A stretch of DNA of 64,000 nt, from assembly GCA_964035545.1 (NCBI GenBank), contig OZ037765.1, positions 2,976,001 through 3,040,000 on the forward strand, given 5' to 3'. This document shows positions 39,592-64,000 of this stretch, piece by piece. The notes beneath the pieces are model-generated. The model had not been told where the DNA came from, did no database searches, and saw only the letters and a list, made by a program, of their open reading frames with translations. This stretch comes from Bugula neritina. Its lineage: Eukaryota > Animalia > Bryozoa. Every line of letters starts with the position of its first letter. The first letter of the stretch is position 1. The position numbers and the translations under genes are program-made.

Positions 39592-42500
39592 CTAAAGAAG
39601 GACGCAGCTTTTAGAGGTGGCTTTAGGAGCTGGTTCTTGTTTAGCAGGAGGAGTAGGTGCTTCACTTTGTGTCGGCTTTGGCTGAGCTGCAGGAGAATTT
39701 GATTTGTCTGCAGCTTTAGCATCCGTCTGGGAGTTGGCAGGGGGAGCTGCCTTTTCTGGTTCTTTGTCTTTTGCTGCCTTTTCTGGTTCCTTGCCTTTTG
39801 CTGGCTTTTCTGGTTCCTTGCCTTTTGCTGGCTTTTCTGGTTCCTTGCCTTTTGCTGCCTTTGCTTTACCATCAGAACCAAGAGACACGCCATGCTCCGC
39901 CATTCGCCTCAATATTTCATTAAAACAGCCCTCATCTGCGAGACTACCTTCTTTAGAGCAGTCCACGTACTTCAACTGAGCCAGAGGCATGCTCATGGGA
40001 CCAGCCGGCGGCCATGTTGTCTTCTCTAGCAGAAGAGGTACGATTGGTTTACTCAGAGAACTTGTCAGACTGATTTCACGTCTGCAGTTGAGTGAGAGAG
40101 AATATTTCTCAGTCACACAGCTTAGTACGACTTTACAGTTTCTGATACCTCTGTCTATCTTATCATACAGACTGTCTCCCGCTCCCATCTGTTCAATGTC
40201 TAGCCAGCAGGTAAATCCTAGAGACTTCAGTTTCTTATAGAAGGCATATACCTGCAACACAAACCAATATTCTTAAAAGGAAATACAGTGAGAATAAGTT
40301 GTAAGGATTATTGTATGCATTAACAATCTGCTCTACCCGAGTGCACCCTGATAATACTAAATGATATGCCACTAGGTAAACATGCAATACATGTTATGTC
40401 ACACCTCCTTCTGCTTGCCCCACTGGTAAGAAATGAATACGTCAGGGTTCTTGGTATTGTCTAGCTTCTTCTCTGCAGCACCAACCACTCTATTTCCTGT
40501 TTTTGTCAGCCACCAATCATCCATTTCTTGAAAGTAAATCAGGTGAATAAATAAATACGGGAGTTGCCCTTTCTTTCACGCTAAAAACTCATCACGGTAT
40601 TCCAATAATATTAAGATTTACTCAAGTCTACACAAAAATAGCAAGAAACTTCTCAATAGTTAAAAACTCTGATATCAGTTCACATAATTTACGTCCTGCT
40701 GACAGATTTAAATCAAAAACTTATTGCGTTTGGAGACTATTTCTTTAAACAAACCAGTCTTATAACCGATCAGAAAACAGTATGGAAAGTGCAGATACTA
40801 GTTAGGGACGCAAATGATTACCTTTACTGACAAGTTTCTCATCAGGCTCTATAACCTGGCGAATCTGCATTATCAGCTCTTCAATCTTAGCCTCAGGCCA
40901 GTAAATCCCCTCTTTACGCTCATTCTCACGTTGGAAGAACCTCACAAACAAGTACTCACTGAAGATGGGTCCCATGGCACCACTGGGAGGCCACGGCATT
41001 TTCTCCATTAGCAGAGGGAACATTGGTTTGCTCAGGTTAACAGAGAGATTCACCTGCAAGATTCAGCATTGGAGATACTTAGACACATCTGCATTACTTT
41101 GATACGTCTGCAACACATATTAGACGTCTGCAAATGTCTTCCATGTGTATAAAACAGATGTAATACTATTATGGCGTCTGCAATTAACAGTTAGTGAAGT
41201 CCTATAGCTTCAGTTCTGGAAATAACTAACATTGGGTGATGAAGAAATAAACCGGTATAAAGAGAGTTTGGTGTAAATATTATGATGAAAGCCAATTTAA
41301 AGAAATGTTGCCACATTTTTTAGCCACTCTACCAACTGCCTAATAGTGACACAACTACACTGAAGTGCCAACAGCTCAATGTGGTAGAAATATTTGCCCA
41401 AATTTTGCTCTTTCATGTTTACTAATAAAACTATAAAACTACATATTCCTCATATTTTTACCAATTTACTTTAGACACTGATACCTACTTACTATATAAT
41501 ATAATTACTGTATACCAATCAACATAATTATAACATACAAGGTTTATGAAAAACTATAAACAAGTATAAGTAGACATCAGTATTAGCAGCATGATATATA
41601 CCAATATATGTATTATATAGTGTAATATAGTATTGTGACATAATATATGTATACTATATACAGTAATATATTATATAATGTATGTAGTATCATACGAAAT
41701 AACAGACAGACCTCTTTGTTACAGTTTGCTGACTTGGCATACTTCTCCGTAACCAGACTCAAGATTACTTTAGCTGCACGAATTCCATTATCAATCTTTT
41801 CATATAGTTTGTCTCCTCCACCCATTTGACCTGAAAATAGTTTAGTATATGACACAGAGCGTAAACTGAGGTGGAAATAGCAGTATTGTAGTCAAGCATA
41901 TAATACAGAGTAATAGACATAAACAGAAAAATAAATTAAAATGTATATACAGTACTTATTATGACATATCCTTATTAGGCATTAGCCAATGGCTGAGCTT
42001 TAAAGTAGTGCTCATAAGAAATAGCATGTTTTTTCGTTAAATAATGATCCATTATTATATGATAACTCACGCAAGTTTATAGTCACTATCCCTGTGAGAA
42101 ACCCCTGATAGAGAAGATTTTTGTTAAAGCAGGCTAAGGACTTATTTAAATGAGGCACAGGAGCAATTATGACTGGATGCTCTTCCTAACATCACCAATG
42201 GTCTTTGTCTGGGCTCGAACCCATGACTTCGTGCTTACTAGGCAAACGCTCTAACCCTTAGACCACGGCTGCTCCCGATCCATTATTATATGATATATCA
42301 GATAGCAACATCCAGCCAAATATATATTATAGTGTAAAGTAAATACTATACAAAATGTCATATACTGTGATAATCACGCAACTAATTCAATGTGACAGGT
42401 TAAACTAGCATAACATAAGCTAGACTACACAGTATAATATAAAACATAATAATATGTAATTAAGGAATAGTAAATTTATATAAATGCTGTATATAAAGAC

Positions 42501-45500
42501 ATACCAATATCTAACCAACAGCTGAACCCAGCGTTAGTCAAATATTCTTTCAGGATGACAGCTTTCTCCTGAACTCCCCACTGGTAACTGATGAACACAG
42601 AGGGTGGGTGTTTGAGGTCGAGTGGTTCATCCACAGGTACCAGCTCACCTGTAAACAGTACCTAGATTAGATTTCAGAATAGAAAAATTAAAGAAGCAAT
42701 ACAACAAATTTATAGAAAAACAAGCTCAGCTAAGCATACCAGCAAGGTTGAGCCCCCACCGATGTGAAGATATGAGTTATCCGTGGCACCCTTAGTAAGA
42801 CACCAGTCTAGAAACCTTCCCACGTTGAACAAACTGTAGACAGTAACTGAATGAAGTAGTGGCTGCAATGAAGTCTTTGTAATACCAAACAGATGGAGAT
42901 AAAATTGACACAGTCAGTTGGTTTCTCCAGTCAGTTAACTTTTCACAAGCAAACCAGATAATTAGTCAGTTAACCTTGTAGGGTCTCAGTGAGTGAGTCA
43001 TCAGTGAGCCAGTCAGTGAGTGAGTAACTGAGTGCATCAGTGACTGAGTCTTTTGACTCACCAAATTATTGAGTCAAATAGGCACAAGAGTTGGTCATTA
43101 CCAAGTATGTCATGAGAAGCTTTATTTTCTTATCTGTGATTATCAAAATCATCATGATAATTTCATACCAGGATAAATAACTCCCAATTGATAAATAAAT
43201 ACTTAAAAATCCAAAACAACGTAAACTAGTAATAAACATATACTCAGCCAAGGAAGTCACACAATACAGTTATGATTATTAGTTGGAGAATTAAGGAGAG
43301 AGAGAGAGAGCGATTAGAGAGGGGATGTGGAGACAGACCAACATTGGGGTAGTTTAGCTACTTACGTGTAGACTCATTTATTCGACACGCCTGCCACATT
43401 CCATAAAGTTTACAAGCAAATGATTGTTGTAGAAGTAAACATAAACAGATATTTTGTTATGTTTAAATTATTATTTTAAAGAATTTGAACCAAGTAACAT
43501 AAAATCATTAATACATCGTTAAAAATAACCACCCGCAACTCATGAAAAAGTTTTTTAAAAATTAGTATCTACTGACTGTGTGTAACTTACAACATGTGGC
43601 TAATATAAATGCAACTTACGTTTCATAATTTTTCAGTTTGAAAATGAAAGCCAAAAAAGGCAAAAACACTCAAAAATTGTATGCTAAACAATTTACAAAA
43701 GCATCAGAAAAATATTATGCTAAGAAGTTACCTGCTGCCTTCATGGCGTTAGCTACCACAGTGGCAGCATCATCTCTTCCCATATCCTTGAGCACAATGT
43801 AGACGGCTCTTGTAGCCTCAGAGCTGTTGTGAGTAGCAAACCACTCAACTAACATACTCATACAGGGGCTGTGGTGAGATGCCCATGCTTTCAGATCATC
43901 ATTACTGTAGCTCAGTCTTTTAGCAAGGAGTCTCCAATCAGTGTTAGACTCAGGATCTAGCAATTTGGCTACGTCATGTGACCAAGTTGGAGTTGTGTCC
44001 ACAGTCTATAAAAATTACCAAATACATTTTAACCTGGTATTTCAATGTGTGCTCACCGGTGAAACATAAACTACAAAATATTTGAAGTATTTTGAATAAA
44101 TAAAGACCACCATATCATCAGACATCACCTTTCTGTCTATTCTCTCAATGTCAATCATAGCCTCAGCAAGTTCTGCCTTCACCACCTCCAACTCCCCTCT
44201 CTGTAGTGTAACTTCAGTGTTGAGATCTTTGATATCTTCAGAGTGTTGCTGTACAGTCTCATCAACTCTGGCCACGTTGTCTTTAGTCTCAGCCAAGTCG
44301 TTGGTGACAATCCCGAGCTGTTCCGTGTTGGCGTCAACTTGCTCCGTCACAATGGCCAGGCTACAAGTTTATACACACATAGATCAACTTCAGCATTTCA
44401 CCATCACAATTCATAGCAAGAGATGGAGAGAAATGTGTTGGTTTGTAAAAATGTACCAAAAAGTCAAACTTTTATACTTGAATTCAGTTAATTGAGTAAT
44501 TAGGAAGTTCAAACTCTTGTTATACTTTAGTTTGTAGTCACTTTGCCATTTATATTATAAAAGCACAGAACTAAAACTAGAAAGTTAAGATCATCAAAAT
44601 TAAGCACAATGAGAAGATGGTAACTTTTTAAAAAAATGCATAACAAAGGAAAATATATTCTGCTCTCTCCTCAATTGAAAAGTTCCAACTACCAAAAGCG
44701 CTTTTTATCTTGCATATCACTTTTAGGTACAATGATCTTGATTTTTGCAATTAGGTGAGATATTCTGGTTATTGGGTTGTAAGATACATATTTTATATCA
44801 TTAAAAGGGTGATTTCTTATCAACTCTTTCCATCCCAAAATACACCAAACTTATACACTAACCCCTTACTTATTCTAAATAATCAATCACCACGCCCATC
44901 AAGCTATTAGGACATGTGCTAATAGTTAACAGTGTATCTCTCTCCCCTGAGTGAATTACATTTAGCTGCCTACCTTCGGCCTTCAATAAAGTCCAGGATA
45001 GAGTTAGCGCTGTCCTTGAACTGGACGTCGGAGGTCATCTTGACGATCTGAGGTTTGTACTGTTTCAGCACTTCTGGGTGTTTCATACCAATAATCTTGA
45101 AGGTATTCATAATCACCTGCTTGTGAGCAGACATGGCGCCCTTGCTGGTCTGCTCCAACAGCCAATCCATTACCAGCTTGGCTCGGCTCTGTGACACAAA
45201 GTCAACAAATTCAAAATACGATACTCGTATTTAATAAACTCTGTTGGATTAACAAAAATAGCAAAATTCAAGTTTAAAATTTAATTACACAGAAACTTTT
45301 CTAAATGGGTCATTTTACTTAATTTAATACACACTGAAATCTCCAGTTTTTAGCTATTTTTCACAATTTAAATAGTAATGAACTTGGCTTTTTGCTCAAA
45401 ACTAGTAAAAAACCAATAAATACACCTAAATAATTAAGGTTCTTCTTAATTTTGCTTGATTTCCCATTTTTTTTATTTATTTAGCTTATTAGGAGTGCGA

Positions 45501-48500
45501 AAATTAGCTGAACCATTAGGAAAAAACATGGGAAGTAAAGCAAAACTAAAAAGAACTTTAATTATATAGGTGTGTTTATTGATGTTTTACTAGTTCTGAT
45601 CAAAAACCCATGTTCATTAGCAGTTAAATGGTGAAAAATAGCAAAAAGCTGATGATATCCAGTGTGTACTAAATTAAGTAAAATGACCCAAATAATAATT
45701 ATAATTCAAATGTTGCTACCAAACTTTTTTGTCTTGGCCAAGTATGCTTGAAATTACTAAACTAGCCAAACAATTTTAAAGTAATTGTAAAAATTGTTTA
45801 TTGAAATTTTACATAATACTGTTTATTATACACAATAGCACCCTTCTGAAAGAGACACATATTCCTTAACAACATTCAACTACATCCACAACACACCTGA
45901 TCTGCAGTGGCGGATCCCACTGCTGTCAGTATGGTGCAGACAGAGTGCATGTAAATCGGGTTGGCTTCTCCATACTTCATAATAGGGATGGGGTCAATCA
46001 CATTTGCATGCTCATTGGCTGCCTTGGACAGAGCCTCCAGAGCAAAGTACTGAGTGAACTCACTGTCCAGACAGGGATACAGGGCGTCAATAATCTCCTT
46101 GGTCAGTACCTGTACCAGAATGCATTGCTATATTACGTAACATACAGCAGTATGATTGCTTCAGACACAACATAAATAATCACGAAGAATATATTAAAAA
46201 AGTTTCAAAAAAAAACTGATGCATTTCTTTAACCATCTATACAATACTTTCAATGTGCTCAATACTACTCAGTATATCATATAAACAAAACCATTGCATC
46301 TATTGATAAAAAGATGTTGAATGTATACTAAACAAAGTGTTAGAATATCGTAGCAAAGTGGTAGTTAGTAGTTACTTTAGGGCTATGGATGGCAATCTCC
46401 TTTATAAGGTCACAGATCTTCATAGATACAGGTCCAGCCATTTTTGGTAGATGTGGAACAATGTCAGAAATATTTTTGTGGATGACCCCAGTATGTGTGG
46501 AATACACATTTACAAGCATCTCTGCAAAAAATAAAGTTTAATAAAATACTTTTCTTACATGAAGTAATGACCACATTATGTGGCTTTAGAGGGAACAAGG
46601 CAAGCTTTTACTGTAAATCACAGGTAAACTTCAAAACTTCTACATTGGAAAGAAAAGATGTTGCGTATATATTAAAATTTTTAAAACTTTACAATTAGGT
46701 TAACCAAACATTTTGAATATTGTTTCATTTGCTACCAAGTGGGGTTTTAAATTAGGCAAAACAAACACACTGCGAGAAAAATTAATTTTAATGAAAATAA
46801 CTAAATGTGAGTGACTAATAGCCTCCACTAGGCACTGGGTGTAAATAATTTATTCACATTCTCAATATTTCAGTTTAAACAGCATTGAAATCAAAATGAA
46901 AACCACAACTATTCAACTTGAAAGTTTTGTTTATCAAAAACCATTTTTGATTCCGTTTATTAAAAAGAGCAACAGCCCAGTGACACCTAACACCAACAGT
47001 ACAAAAGTATCATGTATTTAAAATGTGTATTTTATTAGTAGTGGTTTACATAACAAGTTCAAGCCTATGAATAAAGAATTTTGAAAACTAATAGCAAGGC
47101 TCTTCTCCTTTTGTGTATAAATTAAAACTAAGGAGGTGAAACTGAGAATATCAAAGACTTGGAACAGACAAAGAGAATTAAAAGTGCTTGTTTATTCAAC
47201 CAGCTCTAAACGAAACATGGCCAAACACAATAACTGATGTTAGTCCAATGTCTTATTATAAGTCTCAAGAATGCATTTGACACAAAAAACAAGACAGACA
47301 TCAGAAGAGTGCCAGAGATAAAAATGAAGAGAACAAAACATGGTGTGGCATTATAACAGTTAACCTTAGATGACATGATTTTGATGATACAAACACACAA
47401 AAAACGGAGCTAGATGAAAGAGTGTACCGGGTGTTTGCTGATAATCATCTTCTATTCCTCGCTTCAAGAAAGCATCAATGTGTCGCTGTATAGTAGCGTC
47501 ATCAATGCTGTCTCCCAACTCTTTGAACGCTGCCGCAAAGCAGTACTCTGTGTAGTAGATAATATAATCATCTTTGGAGAGAGGACTCTCGCTGTACATC
47601 TTCTCCAACACCGGCAGCAGGTGCACACACATCTCCCCTCTCTGTGGGGAGTAAAATCAAGTCTCCGTTAACTAGTTATTAAATGGGGAACTAAACCAAT
47701 TAGTTGGAAATTTATTTATGAATTCCAAAAAGAAAATTAATCAATTAATATACGGTTGAGGTAGAACTCAGCTATGTTCTGGAGAAATATTGATAGAGAG
47801 CACAAAATTGTTTAAACAGATTGAAGAAAATTGGATAACAAAAGAAACTATATTTAATATTTGAATTTGGATATTGAATTTTTAACAAATTAAGGTTAGC
47901 ACCATAAACTACAGCATAAAAACAAATGATACTGCAATATGTCAAACAATCTATTACATTAATATACATATCTTGTAAATAAAACTTACTGAGGCATCAG
48001 CGATAAAAAACAAGTCAAAATGTTACGAATCACTTTACAAATGCTTTTGCATCAAATTACAAAAAAAATAAAAACAAGAAGTTGAAACCAGCAACCTCAG
48101 TGCCGAAAGTCCCGGTAATCAACTGGTAGATGTTGGCAAACAATGTGGAGTTGTTTCCCTTTGAACCTGTAGCCAACTCTAGTATTCTGTCCACACATAC
48201 ATCTAGAAATAGTGTAAAGAATAAAGTAAATCATTCATTACCTGTTTACTAATTAGAAACACAGGTTTTTGGGAATATTCGCAACTAATAATAAAACATT
48301 TTTCTATTTCCAAGCAAATATAAATTGTGACCTAGTGATCTGAATATAGTAAAGGTGGGTCCGAGCAGATTATTGCAGTGTTACTATAGAGTATAGACAG
48401 TATAGATTATGTAGTAACAACAATAACTTGACTCATGGTTAGTCAATAAAAACTTAGAAAATACAAGGATTCTATTTTAAACTTTAAAATAATAATAATG

Positions 48501-51500
48501 ACTCTACTTAAAGAAAGTTGTTTCATTAAACATGCACTGCATTATAACGATTTCCATCTCAAACTGAGAAGACAAATTTTTGTTTGTACACAGAAAAACA
48601 ATACAGTGTGCATGCTGACAAACATGTGATGTGATATAAAACTGTCCTCCTACACACAGCTCTTGCGGTCTAAATACTAACTAAAGTAACGAGCATTCTG
48701 ATTGGTTACTCCTAGTAATGCAACATCACAACCTGTTTAATCAGAATGTTTAAGTCCAACACAAAATGACCATTGCATAGAGTTACACTCCCTGTCCTTA
48801 CCAGTGATGTCATACATGAACTTCAAAGACTCCTTGTCTAGTTTTTTAGGCAACACCTCAGTAAGGGCACTGAACGTGCTGTAGATGAGATTAGCAAACT
48901 CCTCTTCAGGCTTGTTGTCTGGAGGTTTCTTCTCGTAACGCGTCGCCGCCTTCGGTAAGGCTGATGCCACTTGCTTGAGAAATTCAACGTGTTCTGTGAC
49001 AGACTTTTTCTGAAATCAACATCTTGAACTAACACTCTACAGCGCAAGTGTGTGGTGTATTACAATTGCAGCAACCTATCTTAATTCAAAGTGAGTTAAT
49101 ATTTTCATATGCATCGGATTTGTAAAACGGGTGATTCACTCTATATCCAACACAGTCACTTGAACTGAAAACATAAATTATAAAAAACTAGAGAAAAACA
49201 CCTGACAAACCTATAAACTTATTTCACCACATTGCATTCATAAAACCATTCTCGCTCAATAATATTGTGAAAGATATACATGTTGTCTTTGTTAGTGAAA
49301 CTACTTCATGTTAGCCAAATTAAACTCATCAAATATTAAATATACTGTTTAGTTAAATAAAATTAAAGCAGACGTCTTCAAAACAGTATGTAATTGCAAT
49401 GTCAAATAACTTCTGGTAACTGACCGCCCACATCAAGTGCTCCTCTGACTGGGCCCAGTGGAAGGACTTGATAAGACAGGGACACTTTGTCTCCAGAGTG
49501 AGGATGTAGATAGCTGTGTTTACACTCCACAATTCAGAGTTATCGCTGATATCTTCACACGCTTCTAGCAAAACACTGCAATGTGATGTGAGAGGATAGC
49601 ATTTCCAACACTCAGTAACTTCAAGCATAAACAACAGATACAAAGTATAACAGGTCAAGTAAATAGAGAAATAGTATTTGTACAGGTCAACAGGCAAACA
49701 ATAAAGTTCTGCGCCGCTGCCTTGAATAGGGGAGCCTTAATCAACTTCCTCTGAGATTCCGACGCAATCTTTTAAATTATTTTGCGATCTGCCTTTAAAT
49801 TATAACAACTTTATACCATAGATAACAGCAAGAAGTCAAGTAAAACCCCCTGAAAAAAATTGCTTACATAAAAGCCCTTGCAAGTTCATAGACCACCTGA
49901 TCCACAGCCTCAAACAGTTCCAGGTCACCTGTGGTCTCTTCCACTCGCCTTGCAACTGTCTTACAGATCTCAAGGAGTAGCTGGAGATTCTCCTGTAAAG
50001 AGAGAAGATAACTACGTGGTAAGAAGATTAATTAAACTCATTCAGAATTCCATGGCTTGTAAACAGCCAGAATTAAACGTTCAAAATGTGTCAAGAACGT
50101 GGAAGATAAATGGCACACATCTGTAAATAAGTTCACCTGCTTTTCTTGCTGCCGGACAATTAAAACTGGAATTGACCCAGCAAACTATTAAAGTGAACAT
50201 AATATTTTTTGATGTACATATTACGTTTATTAGGAATGGAGGGATGCCTGGAAAATAATTTTGCAATAAGATCATTTGACTTGACGAATCCTGTAATAGA
50301 ATGATAGACAATGCGAAACAAAATCAGCCAAACTGGGATTATTTCTGGTGAAGAAGCTCAAATACTAGTGCAATAGATAAGTGCCAGGAAAAAGGCATAC
50401 ATATGTTTAAATGTTATTACTTTATAACACTACGTCTGTACTTTAAGTAGACATGTTCTTCATTCGCTGTTGAAATAAAAAAAACCATCACACCGTATTC
50501 AGCTGACTCACGGATAGAGGTGCCGGGTCTTTAGACAGAGATGAAAGCACAGCTTCTATTTCCTTTCTCTGGTAAAACTCTGTGATATGCTTGGCATTGC
50601 CTTTACCAAGCATATCATGAGTTTCCTTTAGTGTTTCCTACAGAGCAAACAGTGCAGTTAGTTTGATGGGTAACTAGCATATTGAATAGTATGCTATGTT
50701 ATATTGTATACATGTATACTAACTACATGCTGTACTGTGTATGCATGCATTTGATTAATTTATAAATTTCATTAAATACATAAGAAAAAGATATTCACAG
50801 TTTGATCACCATTCACAATAATTTGATTTTCAGACTCTTTTCAGAGGTCATGATATCCCCTTTACAACTAAGAGTTGTTTCCTGCTGAATTGAATTGGTT
50901 GAACCTTTGTATGAAGAGCAAACTCATTCAAAATTTAAAGTTTGGGGGCAACTTAAACTCTAATTATGCTATAGAATTGGTTTTTAGGAGACACAGTAGA
51001 TAATTTGGTGTAAGAACACATATTGGCAGTTCAAAATTTTTTTTTTTAAAAATATCTCTTCATAAAGAATTTTGATAAAAAAAACTTGAAAGCATTTTTG
51101 TGGTTTTTTTTACTGAGCAATGCTGAAGTGCCACTTCAGTATTGCTCAGTAACCAAAACCACAAAAATGAGTTCAAGTTTTTTTTTTCAACATTTTTCAG
51201 TTTGGAAGGACACAACTCTTAATTGTAAAGGGAACATTAAGAACCTTTGAAAAGCTTAAAAATAACAATACATAAATTTGATATTTAGTAACAAACATTA
51301 GTAATTAGAAAATTGAATCATATCTAGTATCGTGTATCTCACAGCCCGATACCGACACCAAATTGTTATGTCACCTTGGGATCCGCCACAGCCATGGTGC
51401 TCATCAGATCCCCGATGGTAGAAGACACAGTGTCACACATCTTAGACTTATTCTGAGACAGTCTGGGTATATTCTTCTTAATTACATCAGAGTGTTTTGA

Positions 51501-54500
51501 GAACATGTCCACAAGCATTTCTATGGGATATAGAATAGTAAATATAACATCTACTGGTCTTATCATGCTTTGATAATTTAGCAGTAATGAACTAGTCAAA
51601 CTGAATGTGAGATACATCCCTGTCTGTCTACGTAGCAACACTCGGAACTTGAAAAGTACATAAATGAATTATAGGGATTGACTTGAATTTGCCTCAAAAA
51701 TGTCACGGCAAAAAATTATAATTCTCTCAACTTTTACAATTAAACAAAACCTTTGACTTGTGGAAAGAAAAGCAACCCATCACTACTCTAGTTATTATTA
51801 TATTGGCATTATACCACATTTTATCATTATATTATATAATATTAATTATTATTGTATCATATGAGTCTAGCTAATCAAAACTTTCCTTTGAAAGTGCACT
51901 AATAAAGAGGTAAAATGGTCAAGGTCAAATTGAACATAGGGAATAAAATGTTAAAGCACTCTATAAACGTCAAATATTACCTTAAACTAAATGCATATGC
52001 TACAGGAAAATAAATGTATTTTTCTAAAGTTTGTGTGTAAATGTAGCTATGAGTTCAGCTTTAAGCATAAGTCTACGTTTAAAAATAGCTTAGATTCAAA
52101 CTTTTACTCACGGGGTGTTGGGTGGTATTCATTGTCCAGCCCATTCTTTATAAGCATATCAATGTGCCGCTGTATGGTAGCATCATCAATGTTATCTCCC
52201 AGGTGTTCATACGCCAACTTGATGCAGTCTCCAGTGTACTTTAGTAGATACTCACTCTTGTCCAGCCCCGACTCTGCGTACATCTTCTCCAGCACTGGCA
52301 TCATGCTCACACACAGCGCACCTCTCTGTGTTGGAAAAACGTAAAAGCAAACTAAAAATGACTAGAGTGTAGGGTGTCATATATTTCCATTCCATAAGAT
52401 GAGAAAAATTTTCAAAGTATTCCTAAAGGTCGGCTGTCTTTTATGTTTATTAATAGAAACTGCTTTTTACCACATTCTTTTGAGAATTATGTAAGTTTCT
52501 AGCTTGGCTTGGCTTAGCTTTCGTAGACAAGCTGCCTACAGCGCAGTCAGTGCTAGCAAAATGGTCGTACTTGTTAGAGAGCAAATAAATTAGTTGTTAA
52601 AATATTTTCTTTTTTTCAATGATGTTGAAGACAATTGTTTATATTGTTTAGTTGTTTTAAAGTTTATGTTATGACTGAGGTTTTGAATTAATTGTAGTCT
52701 TGACAGTGTCAAGGTGTCAAACAGTGTCACGTTAGTTCATCAACAAAACAAAAGACATCAGTGAAGATTGGATACCCAAGTCTAGTCTACTTAATTAATG
52801 AGAAGTGTATTTTCCTATTAATAGAAAGTGCAAGGAAACTTGTTTTGTGTACTAAAAGTTTATTTTAAAAGAAAATAAAGGTAATATATAACTTTGCGTA
52901 AACACATTTATATGGCAAACTGATTTGCATAACACAAACTCACTAAATGATATATTTTGTAATGTGAATATATTATTTAGACACCAGTTGTAGATCTATA
53001 TTTTCAGAAAGTTCTAGATGGTAGAGGACATTTAGAGTACAGTGTTTAAACTCCGCTGCTATAGAGTTGTAGCTTTATTGGTGAGCACACAACAAAGATT
53101 TATCATGCTATGAATCCACAAAGCTTTTCTGTAACACTTGTCAGATGATTTCAATGAAGGAGAAACAAGTAACATTGGTTTAGCTGAGACAGGACCCTTT
53201 GCACTTTCCAAGTACACTGCAACTAAATGCATTTCAACTTGGATCATATTTTCCCAGTTTATTTTAAATTTTGCTGAACTGAATAATAATTGTGAAGCAC
53301 TCTTTTAATTCGAACATAAATGCTTATAAATTAACAGCAAAGAAGATTTTTGGCGGCAAAATTAACTTTGGGTAATCTGCCATTTATATCTGTAAAGAAA
53401 ATAGTAGAGGCTTTTGAAGGTATGGACATTTCTAAAAAGTCGAGATGGCTATATATTTGCTCTCAGGATCATCTAACATACTGTTAGTCTCTTGTCAACA
53501 AGGCATTCTTAGCTCCAGTACTTCACAACAGTAGCTACTGATATATTTTTAATTCTACACAAACAAACTATGCTTGTCAAACCTATAGAAGTTGTGTTAT
53601 CACTGTTGCTATGCTGTTCATTCCCACAACCATGAAGTGTAAATACCATTATGATTCGTTATGCATGCAATAAATACTTCCACCTAGTTATTGATTATTG
53701 AAAATTGGTAGCTGTGAAAATGTGAATGAACAGTTACAGCCGTTGAATGTAAGGTATTTGAGATATTATGTTATTGCTAGATATACTCAAACTATACTCC
53801 TCAATGAATGGTAGCTAAAAACAGCATTTACAGAATGAAAATAGAATATGCAAAGCATACCCACCTATTAGATCAATAAAATATTACTTAGTGCCATTTT
53901 GCAATGCTCTATCATATTATTTTTATATCACTCTGCTTAAATGTGCACTGACAATGCTAATTTTAGAAGCTGCAAATGAGAATTAGAATAGCAGCATGTT
54001 ATAGCTGCCAAAACTTCATATGACTCACATTTACACGTTGAAAAGATGTCCCACATATAATATTAGTGCAAAGGCTAATTGAAAATCAGCATCTCAACGC
54101 TTTATCTCTTCAATTTTGTATACTTTTTCCATTTGAAATAGAGTCAACTAAAAACTTTGAAAAGCTCCAAGTATAAACAGTGATATAATGCTCTGTCCAC
54201 ATTATGTAGTGTTGAGGACCGACTAGGCTAAAAGATATTATGTAAATCTAACAAGCCTTTTCTCACCTCACTGGCTACAGAATCTACAAGAAAGCTGAAG
54301 ATTCTGTGATAATGATTGGAGTCGTCCACTTCTCCTCCTTTAAAAGTCTTGAGCAATTTGTCAGTGCAGTAGGCTACAATCGGAGTCAATGTAAGACAGT
54401 TGGTTGTTATTCGGCAAGATGTGATCTATTAGTATTAAAAAAAGAAGAAAATGGTTTCGTGTTTGGCAATTTTATCTACCAGCCTCTTCTAGTGACACAT

Positions 54501-57039
54501 CATTGCCAGTAGGTAACAGGCATACACAAAACCATCATAATAGGAAATTATTAAAGGTTAAACAATGTTTCAGCCTCAACTACAAGATATTGCAGCACCC
54601 CTCGATTTACAAGTGCCAGCTGTTACAGAATCTGCACAGACTGACACTAGAAAGTGGATAGTAAAGATGACATGTAGCTTCTTAATGGAGGTAACAGGTT
54701 AACTGCTGCTTGACTAAATTAAAGTATCCTCTTATGTCTGTCTTCAACATGTAGCATGTGCTCCTGACATGCGACTTCTGTATTATTATTAGCTGCTATC
54801 TCTAAGACTATACAGTATAGACCTTGAAGGTCTTAATAAAACGCTTTGTCTCTATTACATTGAAAAGTAAACTCATTAATTTCACTGGGTTTTTAAGAGC
54901 TTGTCAATTTTACTTCTTGATTATGTCCTGAATGCAATTTATTAACTGACATTACAAAAAAACTAAAACCAAAAGCATATAACTTATTATTGTTTATTAT
55001 TGTAAATTATTGTACTTATAAACAATGCATGCTTCTGATGATGTGAGACTAACCTATGTGTAAACACCTTCATGCTTAGGAGTTACTGTTAAAGACACTA
55101 TACAGGATACACCAATGTTTACCGAGTACAAAGTATAAGGTTCCTATATTAATTGTATATTAATGTATACAGGGTACAAAGTACAATGTTCTCATATATA
55201 TTCTTTAATTACGTACCTGCAATTTTGACGAGGATATCCTGAACTTTTTGGTCCAGCTGTTCGGGTAGAACAGAGGTGACAGAGCAGAATGTGTCAGTAA
55301 CTAGGTCATCATAGTCTTCATCAGGTCTGTTGTCTGGTAGGTCATCCTCATATTTTACAGTCATGTTTGGAAGGACGGATAATAGTAGCTCTAGAAACTC
55401 TACACATACCCCAATAGACAGCTCCTGAAAACACAGACATGATATCAAAACTGCATACAGGTAAATATTTTATTATTAAACTGATGAAGACCATTTATCA
55501 CTAATTTTATTACTGGTGAAAAATTTTAGAATCATAGAAATGCACAAGTAAAAATAAATTGTAGAATACAAAATGGTGGAAGTTGCCGAAAAGGCATTAT
55601 TCAAAATCATATAATGACAATGTTGGATACTTTGCCTTCTATAATGAAAACTGATGGGTATTAAAAATTCACAAAAACACCATGTTGATTGGATTAGAAA
55701 GTTTTAATTTCTCTACTAAAACAAAAAGTTAACTGCTAAGCAAGAGACATTTGTGATATTTTATATTCAACAATTCAAAGTTATATAACTACCTAGACAA
55801 TAGGCACAAACCATTAAATAATAATAATGTTTAAATAATATGTTAAATTGTCTAATAAACTGAATTTACAAATTATTGTATATTTGGCGCTATATAAATC
55901 TATACCTCAGCTTAAAAAGTATCATGTAATGTCAAATATCTTCCAATAAGTTTTCTACATAGAAAAACCACTACAAGTCGGTATAAGGAGTTACTACTCA
56001 CCGACCAGAGTATATCTTGAGAGGTTCGTGCTCGAGAAAACAGAGAGATGAGGCAGGGGCACTTGCTCTGAAGTGTCATCTTATAGAGAGTAACATTTGT
56101 CTGCCAGACTTCGGCATTTTCATTAATCTCATCACAGTCACTTACTATCTCCCTGCATTAAACATGTTTATTATATTATTTACACTTCAGTATGAAGGAA
56201 ATTGATGTGGAATTTGAAAATAATGACAAACAAGCAGACCATAACAACACGGCCATTCAGCACAAAAATCACAGAAAAATATATAGCCTAGTTTACTAAA
56301 GTATGATACACAATGTATGTTTGTCTACAAAAAAAACTCACACAAGTTTATAGTCACTATCCCTGGGAGAACCCCTGATGGAAGGGTTTTTTAAATTAGA
56401 CTAAGGACTTGTTCAGATGGTGCACAGGAGCAATTGTGGCTGAATGCTCTTCCTAACATCACCAATGGCCTTTACTGGAAATCAAACTCATGGCTAGGGG
56501 TTTACTGAGCAAGCACTCTAACCTCTAGACCACAGCAATTGTTTGTCTACAAAGTGTTGTATAAAAGTTAAGAAACACAGGCTTACAGGTAAGCATCAGC
56601 TATGCCAGTGTAGATCTCTACGATTGCCTCGTAAAGCTGGAGGTTGCCGGATGTCTCTTTCACTCGTTTAGCAACTGTCTGGCATATTTCAATCAAAAGT
56701 GGAATGTTTTTCTGCAAAAAATTAAATATTCAACTCATTAAAATCAAAGAAGTACGTGTAAAAAAACTGTTCACCAATTTTAAGGAATTTACTGTACTAA
56801 AGTTTAAAAATGTTTTAGGGGACAAATAATTCACCACCAAGATAACATTGATAGTTCTGCACAACTTATATCTCAATTTAAAACTTTATAAAACAGTAAT
56901 ATGAACTTACAGATATTAGAGATGTGTCATCAGAAAGGTTGGAAAAAAACTCCGAAACTTTGTCTTTTTCATAAAACTTTTCTAGGTCTGATGCTTTTCC
57001 TTTGCCAAAGATGGTCTTAATTTCTTTCAAAACATCCAT
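39592..57039 (-). CDS. Large [359-aa helical repeat]x2 - coiled coil - Death - TIR - TIR - CaaX protein, ~1455 aa
   Basis: 23 phase-consistent GT-AG exons: 57039-56911, 56711-56587, 56152-56002, 55424-55217, 54373-54267, 52325-52112, 51520-51375, 50637-50512, 49992-49868, 49575-49425, 49009-48802, 48202-48096, 47641-47428, 46521-46376, 46109-45897, 45188-44974, 44360-44129 (coiled coil), 44005-43732 (Death-like: [36 protein letters not shown]), 42648-42505, 41830-41712, 41053-40822 (TIR1), 40526-40405, 40251-39592 (TIR2 and tail). Both TIRs have VFISYQW, CWLD..QMG.GD and S.NC..E. Confidence 0.85.
39745..39870 (-). repeat. 27-bp coding tandem repeat (AKGKEPEKP)x~4
   Basis: Plus-strand units TTTTCTGGTTCCTTGCCTTTTGCTGGC in the last exon of the TIR gene. 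Confidence 0.9.
42065..42276 (-). mobile_element. tRNA-derived SINE, full length, perfect 19-bp TSD
   Basis: TSD GATCCATTATTATATGATA at 42046-42064 and 42277-42295; head GGGAGCAGCCGTGGTCTAAGGGTTAGAGCG; B box GGGTTCGAGCCC. Confidence 0.93.
45306..45690. mobile_element. Foldback/MITE-like element with ~165-bp imperfect inverted arms
   Basis: TGGGTCATTTTACTTAATTTA.TACACACTG / CAGTGTGTACTAAATTAAGTAAAATGACCCA, with complementarity continuing inward to TTCCCAT / ATGGGAA. Confidence 0.8.
50834..51256. mobile_element. MITE family 1, copy 2
   Basis: Colinear with 21507-21911, including the TIRs and the GAGCAATGCTGAAGTGCCACTTCAGTATTGCTC palindrome. Confidence 0.85.
56332..56539 (-). mobile_element. 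tRNA-derived SINE with 14-bp TSD
   Basis: TSD TGTTTGTCTACAAA at 56318-56331 and 56540-56553; same family as 42065. Confidence 0.9.
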
Positions 57040-61884: not shown

Positions 61885-64000
61885 TGTAATAGTATTATAC
61901 TTGAAGTTCACTGAAATATCTTTATTTTGAAAGCACAACTAATCACTACGAACACATTTCTAAGACAGACAACATATATTATATAAACCACAAAGATGAA
62001 GGAATTTAGGACATAAAGGAAAACCACACAACAGCTATAATAATATTTACAAAACGGTTACACAACTGCATGATGCAATGTCATGCACATTACATTTCCC
62101 CCTGATCTTATCAGATCAAACAGATATATAATAAAACAAAAAGAAAAAACGTTTAGTCATCTACATAAAAGTCTGCTAACCACCTAGGTGGCCGTCTATC
62201 TCTTACTGGTCGATCAATCACTTCGTCTACACTTTCACCTTCCTCAACATTTTCACCTTCCTCAACATTTTCACCATCCACAACTCTATTTGCATCTGCA
62301 TCCTCATCAGCATTATCTGGGCTCAGGTTAATTTCAATGTCTCCATGTACCTGAGATTGCTGTTTTGTACTGGACGAAACGTCACCACTTTCCCTGTTCC
62401 CTGCATTAGCCAGTCGGACATCACTTATATGTCGTGTCATACCATCTACCATCACCGCAGTGTTTGACACAACCCTGGTAATCATGCCCTGTGGCCATGC
62501 AGTTGTGCATTTAGAATTCACAGGTTTTACATAAACTTTGTCTCCTACATTGTAGGGGTTTTTTGTAATGTCTGTGGGCTTGCCTATTGCTGATGGTGAT
62601 ACTTTAGGCAGCTTTACATCATAACTGTATAAACTTTGTGAGGGTACTACATTGTTACTATTTGGGGTGTTGTTGTACCAAAATACCATATTTTCTATTG
62701 AAGATCTAGTTCGAGCTGCCATTCTTTTTATAGTCCTGTGATTGCGCTCTATGACACCATTCCCAGATGCTCTATAAGCACAGCTAAATATGTGCTGTAC
62801 ATCCCATTGCCTCAGTAGCTGTTCCAATCTGTCACTTCTGAAACATGGTCCGTTGTCTGACAGTAACTCTGTTGGTGGACCACGTTGCTGAAACACCTTT
62901 AGTAGCTGATTTACCACAGAGTCAGCAGTCTCATTCTGCAACTTTATCCACACAGCGAATCTACTTGGGCCACAGTCGATAATAGTCAAGTATGGTACAC
63001 GATTATAATGACTCACATCCATTGCCAGCCTATACCAATTCTCATTGACCTCCAGAACTCCTCTTTCCCATTGCACTGGAGAAGGATCAATACTCCTGCA
63101 CACAGCACATTCCTTGACTACTCTTTCAACTAACTCCTTGTCTATGCCTCCTCCGAATTTACATTTAGCTAAATAAAATGTTCTTTCAATGCCCAAATGA
63201 TGCATTCCATGCAGCTTGGCTATTTCATCCTTCAGGTCAGCTACATCAGGAGTTGTCACACCTGCACTTGCACAGGTTATTCGCTTACTAAGCCATGCTG
63301 AACTCACCCGTGTCAGAGCATCCGCCCAATTCTCAGCTGATTTCACTAAATGTATTTTTAATGACAGCTTGTACTCTTCTATCAGTTCTGCTATAACACC
63401 TAACCTACGTTTCACAATCATCTCATTCATGCCATTAACTTTTGGTCTGACACTATCATTGATTACAGATGTGACCCACCTGAATACTGACATTGAATCG
63501 GTTTTCACTACAATGTTGCATAGATTCCATTTTAAAGCCAGATTTAGGCCTTTTACCACAGCTTCTAACTCTGCTACATTAATGTGGGTGCAATCATCGG
63601 GTTTTCTCATCCACGAAGCATCCTCCACTATCTGGCCATCTATTTGCACAGACACCCCTATTGCCAAACTGCTTGCATCACACCATACAGTGCCTGCATC
63701 AGTATTAGCCACATGCCACTTTCCTTTCACAGGATCAGATTTTGCAACTCTATCTAATGTCTCTAACAACATTTTTTGGACGTGGTCAGACACAGCACTA
63801 TCCCACATATCTGATTGCGTCAACCTTTTCATAAAACTGCATGCTACCCTAAGCCACCCTGCTACAGGAAAATGTCCAGTCAGTTTACCACACACCGAAA
63901 ACAGCTCTCGCTTGCTTATGTTGCTATTTGACTCAAGAGATGGGAGCTCACCATCACGCTGCCAGCTATAACATGACATGCCGCCTCTCCACCCCTCTCT
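61885..64000 (-). mobile_element. 3' half of a second Ty3/Gypsy LTR retrotransposon, running off the window edge
   Basis: ORF stop at 62153; PPT AGGGGGAAA; 210-bp 3' LTR 62094-61885 with TGTAAT...ATTACA ends and an internal AATAAA. Confidence 0.88.
62153..64000 (-). CDS. Pol C-terminal part: RNase H + integrase (frame open to the window edge)
   Basis: RNase H WCDASS..INVAELEA..KTDS..NWADALTR; integrase HGMHHLG..CAVC, MDVSH, SDNGPCF, NGVIERNHRTIK. The seven codons upstream of the listed ATG contain no stop. Confidence 0.9.
   Translation of the reverse strand, partial: REGWRGGMSCYSWQRDGELPSLESNSNISKRELFSVCGKLTGHFPVAGWLRVACSFMKRLTQSDMWDSAVSDHVQKMLLETLDRVAKSDPVKGKWHVANTDAGTVWCDASSLAIGVSVQIDGQIVEDASWMRKPDDCTHINVAELEAVVKGLNLALKWNLCNIVVKTDSMSVFRWVTSVINDSVRPKVNGMNEMIVKRRLGVIAELIEEYKLSLKIHLVKSAENWADALTRVSSAWLSKRITCASAGVTTPDVADLKDEIAKLHGMHHLGIERTFYLAKCKFGGGIDKELVERVVKECAVCRSIDPSPVQWERGVLEVNENWYRLAMDVSHYNRVPYLTIIDCGPSRFAVWIKLQNETADSVVNQLLKVFQQRGPPTELLSDNGPCFRSDRLEQLLRQWDVQHIFSCAYRASGNGVIERNHRTIKRMAARTRSSIENMVFWYNNTPNSNNVVPSQSLYSYDVKLPKVSPSAIGKPTDITKNPYNVGDKVYVKPVNSKCTTAWPQGMITRVVSNTAVMVDGMTRHISDVRLANAGNRESGDVSSSTKQQSQVHGDIEINLSPDNADEDADANRVVDGENVEEGENVEEGESVDEVIDRPVRDRRPPRWLADFYVDD

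What the first reader, a model, noticed from the sequence alone, without database searches (positions are those of the whole stretch)
39592..57039. Candidate membrane-anchored innate-immune NADase: helical repeats - coiled coil - Death - TIR - TIR - CaaX in one protein
Seen: a phase-consistent 23-exon model joining a long helical N-terminus, a coiled coil, a Death-like domain and two complete TIR domains. Both TIRs retain the Glu of the alphaC motif (SANCNKE, codon 41714-41712; SLNCRRE, codon 40077-40075). Established: this Glu is catalytic in NAD+-cleaving TIRs (SARM1, plant TNLs, bacterial ThsB) and absent from TLR/MyD88 scaffold TIRs, and TIR NADases need TIR-TIR assembly. Inference: this is neither MyD88 (Death-TIR) nor SARM1 (ARM-SAM-TIR) but a hybrid-looking sensor-oligomeriser-enzyme. 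The helical region might sense or autoinhibit, the Death domain and coiled coil might oligomerise, and the tandem TIRs might form the active site. I know of no functional characterisation of this architecture, but could not search.
Basis: partly seen in the sequence, partly recalled or inferred. Interest (0 to 1): 0.85.

Follow-up and report, generated by a model that had tools for sequence, protein, structure and literature searches.

The report
Conserved invertebrate Death–double-TIR immune gene
This is a real, expressed 23-exon gene for a probably lipid-anchored protein with a long helical arm, a Death domain and two SARM1-like TIR domains. It belongs to a family already catalogued in invertebrates, whose biochemistry (possibly NAD+ cleavage) nobody appears to have tested.

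Summary
On the minus strand, 57039-39592, 23 GT-AG exons in consistent phase add up to 1455 codons. They encode a helical N-terminus, a coiled coil, a Death domain (Pfam 7e-13), two TIR_2 domains and a C-terminal CVLL.

New here: the "long helical N-terminus" is an internal tandem duplication of seven exons with identical exon lengths. Spliced RNA contigs from three studies join the two copies, so this part is one transcript.

A family profile aligns them to SARM1 E642. Its best solved matches are SARM1 and bacterial NADase TIRs, not MyD88 or TLRs. The glutamate, a QMGGGD loop and the CaaX box are kept across molluscs, annelids, nemerteans, rotifers, flatworms, echinoderms, hemichordates and amphioxus.

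The architecture is not new. It is "ecTIR-DC family 6" (Gerdol 2017) and is called "MyD88-like with Armadillo fold" in Aplysia. I found no functional study. NADase activity is plausible (about 0.45) but unproven, and the tryptophan that I recall four residues before the glutamate in known enzymes is an invariant asparagine here.

The scan noted an inverted paralogue just beyond the window. Verdict: new member of a known, uncharacterised family.

The parts
56911..57039 (-). Exon 1 (unit A, exon 1), starting at the ATG at 57039; 129 nt
   Evidence: First ATG after an in-frame stop. Donor TCT|GTAAGT. 36% identical to B1. Not covered by RNA here.
56587..56711 (-). Exon 2 (A2), 125 nt
   Evidence: GT-AG borders in phase. 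Same length as the RNA-proven B2. 47-50% identical to B2.
56002..56152 (-). Exon 3 (A3), 151 nt
   Evidence: GT-AG borders in phase. Same length as the RNA-proven B3. 30-33% identical to B3.
55217..55424 (-). Exon 4 (A4), 208 nt
   Evidence: GT-AG borders in phase. Same length as the RNA-proven B4. 38-39% identical to B4.
54267..54373 (-). Exon 5 (A5), 107 nt
   Evidence: The 3' end is proven: the loose end of RNA contigs upstream of A7 matches 54269-54298 exactly. The 5' border is inferred from phase and from the length of B5.
52112..52325 (-). Exon 6 (A7), 214 nt
   Evidence: RNA contigs in 4 runs, with joints to A5 and A8. 53% identical to B7.
51375..51520 (-). Exon 7 (A8), 146 nt; last exon of unit A
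   Evidence: RNA joints 52112|51520 and 51375|50637 in runs X1, X3 and X4, which are 3 studies. Donor AAG|GTGACA.
50512..50637 (-). Exon 8 (B1), 126 nt; an internal exon, not a second gene's start
   Evidence: Strong acceptor directly upstream. Homology to A1 runs upstream of B1's own ATG. The RNA joint from A8 skips 737 nt.
49868..49992 (-). Exon 9 (B2), 125 nt
   Evidence: RNA joints.
49425..49575 (-). Exon 10 (B3), 151 nt
   Evidence: RNA joints.
48802..49009 (-). Exon 11 (B4), 208 nt
   Evidence: RNA joints. The contigs differ from the assembly by about 6% here.
48096..48202 (-). Exon 12 (B5), 107 nt
   Evidence: RNA joints.
47428..47641 (-). Exon 13 (B7), 214 nt
   Evidence: RNA joints. 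AF2 of this exon gives four helices, pLDDT 64.
46376..46521 (-). Exon 14 (B8), 146 nt
   Evidence: RNA joints. Matches the family N-terminal HMM at positions 660-717, E 1.4e-4.
45897..46109 (-). Exon 15 (B9), 213 nt
   Evidence: The 5' border is supported by an RNA loose end matching 46077-46106 with 3 mismatches. Collinear with HMM positions 709-777, E 0.15.
44974..45188 (-). Exon 16 (B10), 215 nt; last conserved part of the helical solenoid
   Evidence: Family N-terminal HMM E 2e-12. hhalign probability 97%. Splice sites.
44129..44360 (-). Exon 17: coiled coil, 232 nt
   Evidence: Weak hits to many coiled-coil Pfam families. Collinear with the coiled-coil segment of orthologues. The Patella orthologue models as one long helix here.
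43732..44005 (-). Exon 18: complete Death domain, 274 nt
   Evidence: Pfam PF00531 E 7.4e-13. Nearest solved structures are NRADD, p75NTR and UNC5, E about 2e-3. 50-57% identical to orthologues.
42505..42648 (-). Exon 19: TIR1 part a (beta-A, FISYQWG motif)
   Evidence: TIR_2 profile positions 1-31, E 1.6e-4. Aligned to orthologues.
41712..41830 (-). Exon 20: TIR1 part b (QMGGGD loop through S-x-N-C-x-x-E); Glu codon 41714-41712
   Evidence: TIR_2 E 1.1e-5. Invariant columns. The Glu aligns to SARM1 E642.
40822..41053 (-). Exon 21: TIR1 part c
   Evidence: 51-67% identical to orthologue TIR1 C-terminal halves. Splice sites.
40405..40526 (-). Exon 22: TIR1-TIR2 linker plus TIR2 beta-A
   Evidence: Aligned to orthologues. 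Splice sites.
39592..40251 (-). Exon 23: rest of TIR2 (Glu codon 40077-40075), K/E/P repeat tail (27-bp x 4.3 repeat at 39746-39862), CaaX box CVLL (39606-39595) and stop (39594-39592)
   Evidence: TIR_2 E 4e-17. Tandem repeat. CaaX present in 119/140 full-length relatives, with X = L in 86.

Best explanation
The locus is one expressed gene of about 1455 codons. It belongs to a bilaterian family found in non-vertebrate animals and already catalogued as ecTIR-DC family 6.

The domain order is:
- a HEAT-like alpha-solenoid, here built from an internal duplication of a 360-residue, 7-exon unit plus about 140 conserved residues;
- a coiled coil;
- a Death domain;
- two TIR domains of the SARM1/bacterial type;
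- a low-complexity tether;
- a CaaL box.

Most likely mechanism (inferred, not shown): the protein is geranylgeranylated and sits on the cytosolic face of a membrane, kept inactive by the solenoid. A stimulus sensed by, or relayed to, the fast-evolving solenoid lets the coiled coil, the Death domain and the TIR BB-loops drive oligomerisation. The TIRs then consume NAD+ or make an ADPR-type signal through the conserved glutamates, as SARM1 does. The Death domain could additionally recruit death-fold partners.

My odds: real single gene and family member 0.95; prenylated 0.7; TIRs enzymatic 0.45.
For: Gene structure and expression:
- Domains are confirmed by Pfam.
- There are 23 phase-consistent GT-AG exons.
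- Spliced RNA contigs from 4 runs show the joints. The A8-to-B1 joint appears in 3 studies, and one 2242-nt contig spans A7 to B8. Loose ends match A5 and B9.

Family membership:
- Full-length relatives have the same order of coiled coil, Death, TIR and TIR, with E down to 2e-78.
- The Death domain starts at about residue 940, as in mollusc and annelid orthologues at 916-989.
- The orthologue N-terminus models as a confident all-alpha solenoid (pLDDT 85). Its fold matches are SF3B1, importin-beta and CAND1.

TIR type:
- The TIR profile's best solved matches are SARM1 (2e-8), Cat1, AbTIR, PdTIR, TcpB and SPARTA.
- Plant TIRs score 0.03, a TLR scores 0.15, and MyD88 is absent.
- Bacterial defence TIR models also hit.
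- The invariant Glu aligns to SARM1 E642.

Conservation:
- Glu is present in 254/260 motif instances.
- QMGxGD occurs twice in 121/140 proteins.
- CaaX is present in 119/140 proteins.
- Between the two local paralogues, Death-TIR1 is 97-100% identical with dN/dS 0-0.18, while the solenoid is saturated. That pattern fits a conserved effector with a variable sensor.
Against: - No enzymatic data exist for any member, as far as the searchable literature shows.
- The aromatic residue four positions before the Glu (W638 in SARM1 and W204 in AbTIR, from my memory of the literature) is an invariant Asn in both TIRs.
- The published reading is that of a TLR adaptor (PMC6836662, PMC9334734).
- RNA support covers only exons 5-15. 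The Death-TIR-TIR continuity in this species rests on orthologues.
- Exons 1-7 of each unit have no detectable similarity to the orthologues' solenoid.
- Prenylation is inferred from the motif only.
Confidence: 0.5

Rival explanations
1. It is a non-enzymatic scaffold: a MyD88-like adaptor. Its TIRs dock onto Toll-like receptor TIRs at a membrane, with the CaaX tail playing the role of a lipid-binding localisation domain. Its Death domain then nucleates a kinase complex.
For: - The Death plus TIR combination.
- The reading in the literature: in Loripes the gene is gill-enriched together with TLRs (PMC6836662), and Aplysia LOC101850562 is listed as MyD88-like (PMC9334734).
- The -4 pocket position is Asn, not Trp.
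Against: - The TIR profile does not retrieve MyD88 at all, and reaches a TLR only at E 0.15, against 2e-8 for SARM1.
- The Death domain is closest to NRADD/p75NTR/UNC5 rather than MyD88/IRAK.
- The Glu is kept in 254/260 motif instances across phyla, which a pure scaffold need not do.
Confidence: 0.35
2. The 23-exon model wrongly fuses two or more genes. For example, unit A could be a separate or decayed copy, or the TIRs could belong to a neighbouring gene.
For: - B1 carries its own ATG.
- A8 would end at a stop two codons past its donor if it were left unspliced.
- The neighbouring paralogue has only one unit.
Against: - The A8-to-B1 splice is seen in 3 studies and within single contigs spanning A7 to B8.
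- Homology to A1 continues upstream of B1's ATG, right up to a strong acceptor.
- The total length and the Death-domain position match the orthologues.
- The same domain order is found in more than 260 proteins.
Confidence: 0.04
3. The TIRs are enzymes, but not NAD+ depleters. They might make a small signalling nucleotide or act on nucleic acids, as some plant and bacterial TIRs do. The output would then be a second messenger rather than metabolic collapse.
For: - The same active-site Glu evidence applies.
- The altered -4 residue (Asn for Trp) could change product or substrate.
- The relatives include signal-making bacterial TIRs such as ThsB, Cat1 and AbTIR.
Against: No receptor for such a signal has been identified here, and nothing in the sequence distinguishes the possible products.
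Confidence: 0.11

Closest known systems
ecTIR-DC family 6 (Gerdol et al. 2017, Dev Comp Immunol 70:145, as cited in PMC6836662). Examples: the Loripes orbiculatus gill unigene and Aplysia LOC101850562, the 'MyD88-like with Armadillo-type fold' of PMC9334734.
   Same: The order is the same: a long ARM/HEAT-like N-terminus, a central Death domain, two C-terminal TIRs, and no receptor ectodomain. Sequence homology is direct: E 2e-78 to 1e-70 with the TIR2 exon, and 50-57% identity in the Death domain.
   Different: There is nothing essential. In this copy the two halves of the solenoid are still recognisably duplicated (30-53% identity, identical exon lengths), and exons 1-7 are too diverged to align to orthologues. 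I could not read the 2017 paper itself, so I do not know whether it reports the conserved CaaX box or the SARM1-type glutamate.
SARM1 / TIR-1 (ARM-SAM-SAM-TIR NAD+ hydrolase)
   Same: It is the best solved match of the TIR profile (2e-8). The catalytic E642 column is conserved. There is an N-terminal helical-repeat region that could autoinhibit, and oligomerisation modules sit upstream of the TIR.
   Different: There are no SAM domains. Instead there is a coiled coil plus a Death domain, two TIRs rather than one, a much longer HEAT-like solenoid, a CaaX tail, and Asn instead of Trp at -4 from the Glu.
MyD88
   Same: Death and TIR domains occur in one polypeptide, in that order.
   Different: The TIR type is different, and MyD88 is not retrieved by the family profile. 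The Death domain is nearest to NRADD/p75NTR/UNC5. There are also about 940 extra N-terminal residues, a second TIR and a prenylation box.
Bacterial defence and effector TIR NADases (AbTIR, PdTIR, TcpB/BtpA, SPARTA TIR-APAZ, Cat1, ThsB)
   Same: The TIR_2-type sequence is shared. Hits score E 5e-8 to 7e-4 in the PDB and 1e-9 to 1e-3 in PADLOC models. The Glu lies in the same helix.
   Different: This is a eukaryotic multi-exon gene with animal-type Death and HEAT modules. There is no evidence here of recent transfer.

Membership tests
ecTIR-DC family 6 (ARM-like - Death - TIR - TIR) | Central Death domain | tested here: met
   PF00531 E 7.4e-13 on exon 44005-43732.
ecTIR-DC family 6 (ARM-like - Death - TIR - TIR) | Two TIR domains C-terminal to the Death domain | tested here: met
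   TIR_2 hits on exons 19-20 and 23. Both domains align over their full length with the TIR1 and TIR2 of orthologues.
ecTIR-DC family 6 (ARM-like - Death - TIR - TIR) | Long N-terminal ARM/HEAT-like helical region | tested here: inconclusive
   Exons 14-16 map collinearly onto the orthologues' solenoid (E 1e-4, 0.15 and 2e-12). The Patella orthologue folds as a HEAT-like solenoid. Exon 13 folds as helices at low confidence. Exons 1-7 of each unit show no detectable homology. The joined N-terminus was not folded.
ecTIR-DC family 6 (ARM-like - Death - TIR - TIR) | Sequence orthology to named members | tested here: met
   Aplysia LOC101850562 (P0003) is hit at E 7e-75 with the TIR2 exon. More than 260 proteins share the architecture.
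SARM1 family | ARM - SAM - SAM - TIR architecture | tested here: not met
   No SAM hit on any exon or on the orthologues. A coiled coil and a Death domain take that place.
SARM1 family | TIR with the catalytic Glu (E642 column) | tested here: met
   The profile alignment places the invariant Glu on the E of SARM1's K-E-I-V, which is residue 642 by offset.
Catalytic (NAD+-consuming) TIR domains | Aromatic pocket residue four positions before the Glu (Trp in SARM1, AbTIR and plant TIRs; recalled from the literature) | tested here: not met
   Asn in 250/260 motif instances, including both TIRs here.
Catalytic (NAD+-consuming) TIR domains | Measured NAD+ cleavage that depends on the Glu | not testable with these tools
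   This needs recombinant protein and an NAD+ assay.
MyD88 family | MyD88-type TIR and MyD88-type Death domain | tested here: not met
   MyD88 is absent from the profile's PDB hits up to E 10. The Death exon's best matches are NRADD, p75NTR and UNC5.
CaaX-prenylated proteins | Cys at -4 from the C-terminus, followed by two mostly aliphatic residues and X, then a stop | tested here: met
   C-V-L-L then TAG. Conserved in 119/140 full-length relatives, with X = L in 86.
CaaX-prenylated proteins | Actual lipid attachment and membrane localisation | not testable with these tools
   This needs metabolic labelling or localisation of a Cys mutant.

The most novel reading that the evidence does not exclude
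The ecTIR-DC 6 family, this gene included, would be a second animal lineage of TIR enzymes besides SARM1. It would be a geranylgeranyl-anchored, HEAT-solenoid-regulated twin-TIR NAD+ consumer or signal maker. A Death domain would couple nucleotide chemistry to death-fold signalling at a membrane. The family would be ancient in bilaterians and lost in vertebrates.
Probability: 0.35. Interest if true: 0.8.

Novelty: new member of a known kind. Interest (0 to 1): 0.45.

Why it matters
SARM1 is the only animal TIR enzyme I know to have been studied in depth. A 2026 TIR atlas (PMC13142454) stresses that several animal TIR clades remain unstudied.

This family is large. It has several paralogues per genome, often adjacent, in molluscs, annelids, echinoderms and amphioxus. 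It keeps the SARM1 catalytic glutamate in both TIRs and adds a Death domain and a lipid anchor.

If it is enzymatic, the proteins listed as "MyD88-like" adaptors in invertebrate immunomes would need re-reading as effectors. NAD+-based immunity in animals would also extend beyond neurons and SARM1.

The locus offers a natural contrast too: an almost frozen Death-TIR1 module next to a fast-diverging solenoid in two head-to-head paralogues.

Tried and rejected
1. Two genes. I first suspected that unit A and unit B were separate genes, or a pseudogene plus a gene, because B1 has its own ATG. The RNA joints reject this.
2. An extra exon. An ORF at 53304-53062, which I had marked as a possible exon, is not in the transcript. 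B5 joins B7 directly, and A5 joins A7.
3. Simple gene conversion. I first read the 96-98% protein identity of Death-TIR1 with the paralogue as recent gene conversion. DNA identity is only 86-93%, and dS is a mosaic: Death 0.05, TIR1 0.09-0.39, N-terminus saturated. Strong constraint plus perhaps a short conversion tract over the Death exon fits better.
4. A separate short family. The many 150-500-residue 'TIR-CaaX' hits looked like their own family. They are mostly unnamed ORFs called on short ENA, JGI/IMG and Logan contigs, and many begin at the Met of the QMGGGD motif. I read them as last-exon fragments of this family.
5. N-terminal homology. phmmer, blastp, hmmsearch and hhalign of N-terminal exons 1-7 against orthologues gave nothing significant.
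6. Naming the organism. This failed. The best identities are spread over annelids and molluscs, and run names are coded.
7. Steps left out. The exons were never joined into one protein for any search or fold; each exon was used by reference, and lengths and phases were computed from coordinates only.

Full report
THE OBSERVATION

The window is AT-rich animal DNA, 30-40% G+C. On the minus strand between 57039 and 39592 lies a series of open segments. Exon by exon, their translations give:
- a Death domain (PF00531, E 7.4e-13) on one exon;
- a TIR_2 domain (PF13676, E 4e-17) on the last exon;
- a second TIR_2 split over three exons;
- a coiled-coil-like exon.

41714-41712 is the last codon of its exon, and 40077-40075 lies in the last exon. 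The reading frame ends in C-V-L-L followed by a stop. A 27-bp x 4.3 tandem repeat upstream encodes a Lys/Glu/Pro nonapeptide.

GENE MODEL

Working only from coordinates, splice sites and phases, I obtain 23 GT-AG exons that sum to 4365 nt, or 1455 codons. Every search used single exons by reference.

The "long helical N-terminus" turned out to be an internal tandem duplication:
- Unit A has exons of 129, 125, 151, 208, 107, 214 and 146 nt (57039-51375).
- Unit B has exons of 126, 125, 151, 208, 107, 214 and 146 nt (50637-46376).
- The two units are 30-53% identical exon for exon.
- Two single-copy helical exons follow.

B1 has its own ATG, and A8 would meet a stop two codons past its donor. 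So two genes were a real possibility.

RNA EVIDENCE

Thirteen public runs hold part of the stretch. Twelve hold only 8-12% of its sampled words, as expected for exons alone. I laid contigs of four runs from four studies on 46340-52339.
- Every joint is GT..AG on the minus strand and coincides with the predicted borders.
- The A8-to-B1 joint (51375|50637, skipping 737 nt) is present in three studies.
- Single contigs, one of 2242 nt, run from A7 through B8 and continue at both ends.
- The upstream loose end matches the 3' end of A5 exactly.
- The downstream loose end matches the start of B9 with three mismatches.

Exons 5 to 15 are therefore one spliced transcript, and the duplication is internal to the gene. 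Homology to A1 also continues upstream of B1's ATG, right up to a strong acceptor.

They rest on canonical sites, phase, and collinearity with orthologues.

The contigs differ from the assembly by 0-6% per exon, with the same differences in most runs. They therefore come from another allele or population.

RELATIVES

The TIR2 exon finds 2918 proteins at E <= 0.001 in the representative library. The best are 1200-1600-residue proteins with two TIR stretches.

The sources name them uncharacterised, "Death domain-containing" or, once, "MyD88-like protein L1". They come from:
- gastropods and bivalves;
- annelids;
- a nemertean;
- rotifers;
- a flatworm;
- crinoids and sea urchins;
- hemichordates;
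- amphioxus.

Often several paralogues lie on one contig.

These proteins share the order coiled coil, Death, TIR, TIR. In mollusc and annelid members the Death domain begins at residue 916-989. In my model it begins at about 940, which only works if both units A and B are coding.

In an alignment of 12 orthologue N-termini, hhalign finds an internal repeat (probability up to 79%) offset by about 350 columns. The duplication may therefore be old, but this is only suggestive. Deuterostome members and the neighbouring paralogue are shorter.

THE N-TERMINUS

An HMM of orthologue N-termini hits exon 16 (E 2e-12), exon 14 (1.4e-4) and exon 15 (0.15) in collinear order. hhalign gives 97% probability for exon 16. 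Exons 1-7 of either unit are not detectably similar to any orthologue, and the orthologues themselves share only 15-31% identity there.

AlphaFold2 on the Patella orthologue (residues 1-928, 18-sequence alignment) gives a confident all-alpha solenoid of about 45 helices (pLDDT 85), ending in one long helix. Foldseek matches generic HEAT solenoids: SF3B1, MMS19, CAND1 and importin-beta. Exon 13 of this gene alone models as four helices at low confidence.

"Helical repeats" is therefore well supported for the family and plausible, but weakly tested, for this gene's own exons 1-13.

THE TIR DOMAINS

In an alignment of both TIRs from ten species, 16 columns are invariant. They include Q-M-G-x-G-D (the BB-loop region) and Y-x-x-S-x-N-C-x-x-E.

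A profile of that alignment ranks solved structures as follows:
- SARM1 TIR first (E 2.3e-8);
- then Cat1, AbTIR, PdTIR, TcpB/BtpA, SPARTA TIR-APAZ and C. elegans TIR-1;
- plant TIRs at about 0.03-0.06;
- a TLR at 0.15;
- MyD88 does not appear at all.

PADLOC models of bacterial defence TIRs also match. In the HMMER alignment the invariant Glu lies on the E of SARM1's K-E-I-V, which is residue 642 by the chain offset.

Among 140 relatives of 1000 or more residues:
- the Glu position is E in 254 of 260 motif instances;
- two QMGxGD motifs occur in 121 proteins.

One caution applies. Four residues before the Glu, SARM1, AbTIR and plant TIRs carry a pocket tryptophan (from my memory of the literature). 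This family has Asn in 250 of 260 instances.

THE DEATH DOMAIN AND THE TAIL

The Death exon is closest to NRADD, p75NTR and UNC5 Death domains (E about 2e-3), not to MyD88 or IRAK.

A C-terminal C-a-a-X is present in 119 of 140 full-length relatives, usually preceded by K-S-K-S, with X = Leu in 86. By established rules, X = Leu points to geranylgeranyl transferase I. Lipidation itself is inferred.

THE PARALOGUE

About 10 kb upstream, head to head, lies a paralogue with a single helical unit. The scan's note s1-478777 led me to it. Compared with this gene:
- the helical exons are 33-45% identical, with saturated dS;
- the coiled coil is 82% identical;
- the Death domain is 98% identical (dS 0.05);
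- TIR1 is 97-100% identical (dS 0.09-0.39, dN/dS 0-0.06);
- TIR2 is 72-82% identical.

The signalling core is thus under very strong constraint, perhaps with a short conversion tract over the Death exon, while the solenoid diverges freely. That is the pattern expected of a variable sensor or regulator joined to a fixed effector, but this is inference.

WHAT IS KNOWN

The architecture is already in the literature.
- Yuen et al. 2019 (PMC6836662) describe a gill-enriched Loripes transcript with ARM-like repeats, a Death domain and two TIRs. They assign it to "ecTIR-DC family 6" of Gerdol et al. 2017 and speculate that it relays TLR signals.
- Kron 2022 (PMC9334734) lists Aplysia LOC101850562, my hit P0003, as "MyD88-like" with an Armadillo-type fold.
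- Kamm et al. 2019 (PMC6321704) note that ecTIR-DC proteins are widespread in invertebrates and apparently absent from vertebrates.
- A 2026 TIR atlas (PMC13142454) stresses that several animal TIR clades are unstudied.

I found no enzymatic or cell-biological study of this family. I could not read the 2017 paper itself.

VERDICT

- The protein is indeed neither MyD88 nor SARM1, and its TIRs look enzymatic by sequence.
- The architecture is a known, widely distributed family. The catalytic claim is untested, and one pocket residue differs.
- Best explanation: a prenylated, solenoid-regulated, oligomerising twin-TIR effector of the SARM1 type.
- Odds: enzymatic about 0.45. The main rival, a non-catalytic MyD88-like adaptor, about 0.35.
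- Novelty: a new member of a known kind. Interest is moderate.

Noticed in passing
G000:C1:3043367-3055658 (L004+L005), + strand, about 3.4 kb beyond the window end: A head-to-head paralogue with only one helical unit. Its divergence from this gene is a mosaic: helical exons have saturated dS, the Death domain has dS 0.05 (98% aa identity), TIR1 has dS 0.09-0.39, and TIR2 has dS 0.36-0.96. Its TIR1 intron is about 4 kb, against 0.7 kb here.
   Followed up: partly
window 32527-36342 (+): An intact 1271-codon ORF with RVT_1, RNase H, an integrase zinc domain and an rve domain. This is a Ty3/gypsy-type retrotransposon pol, 3 kb downstream of the gene's 3' end. I only observed it.
   Followed up: partly
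window 62153-63979 (-), running off the window end: A 608-codon ORF with DUF7047, RNase H/RVT_3 and integrase core domains, in a block of higher G+C (42%). It is a second retroelement, lying between the two paralogues.
   Followed up: partly
window 46373-52327, exons: RNA contigs from four studies differ from the assembly mostly at the same positions, by 0% (B8) to about 6% (B4) per exon. This points to a divergent allele or population and uneven polymorphism along the solenoid.
   Followed up: no
window 50740-51339 (intron between A8 and B1): Run X1 shows very high contig depth here (up to 850), with contigs that fit two places and have loose ends. This is probably a transcribed repeat inside the intron.
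   Followed up: no
orthologue N-termini (alignment of 12 proteins): hhalign finds an internal repeat (probability 79%, about 216 columns, offset about 350 columns). This hints that the two-unit solenoid predates this species. Generic HEAT-repeat similarity could also explain it.
   Followed up: partly
same genome, about 5.5 Mb beyond the window end (note s1-478608): The scan lists a tandem pair of ARM-TIR-SAM genes. The genome may therefore hold several SARM1-like TIR architectures. I did not examine them.
   Followed up: no
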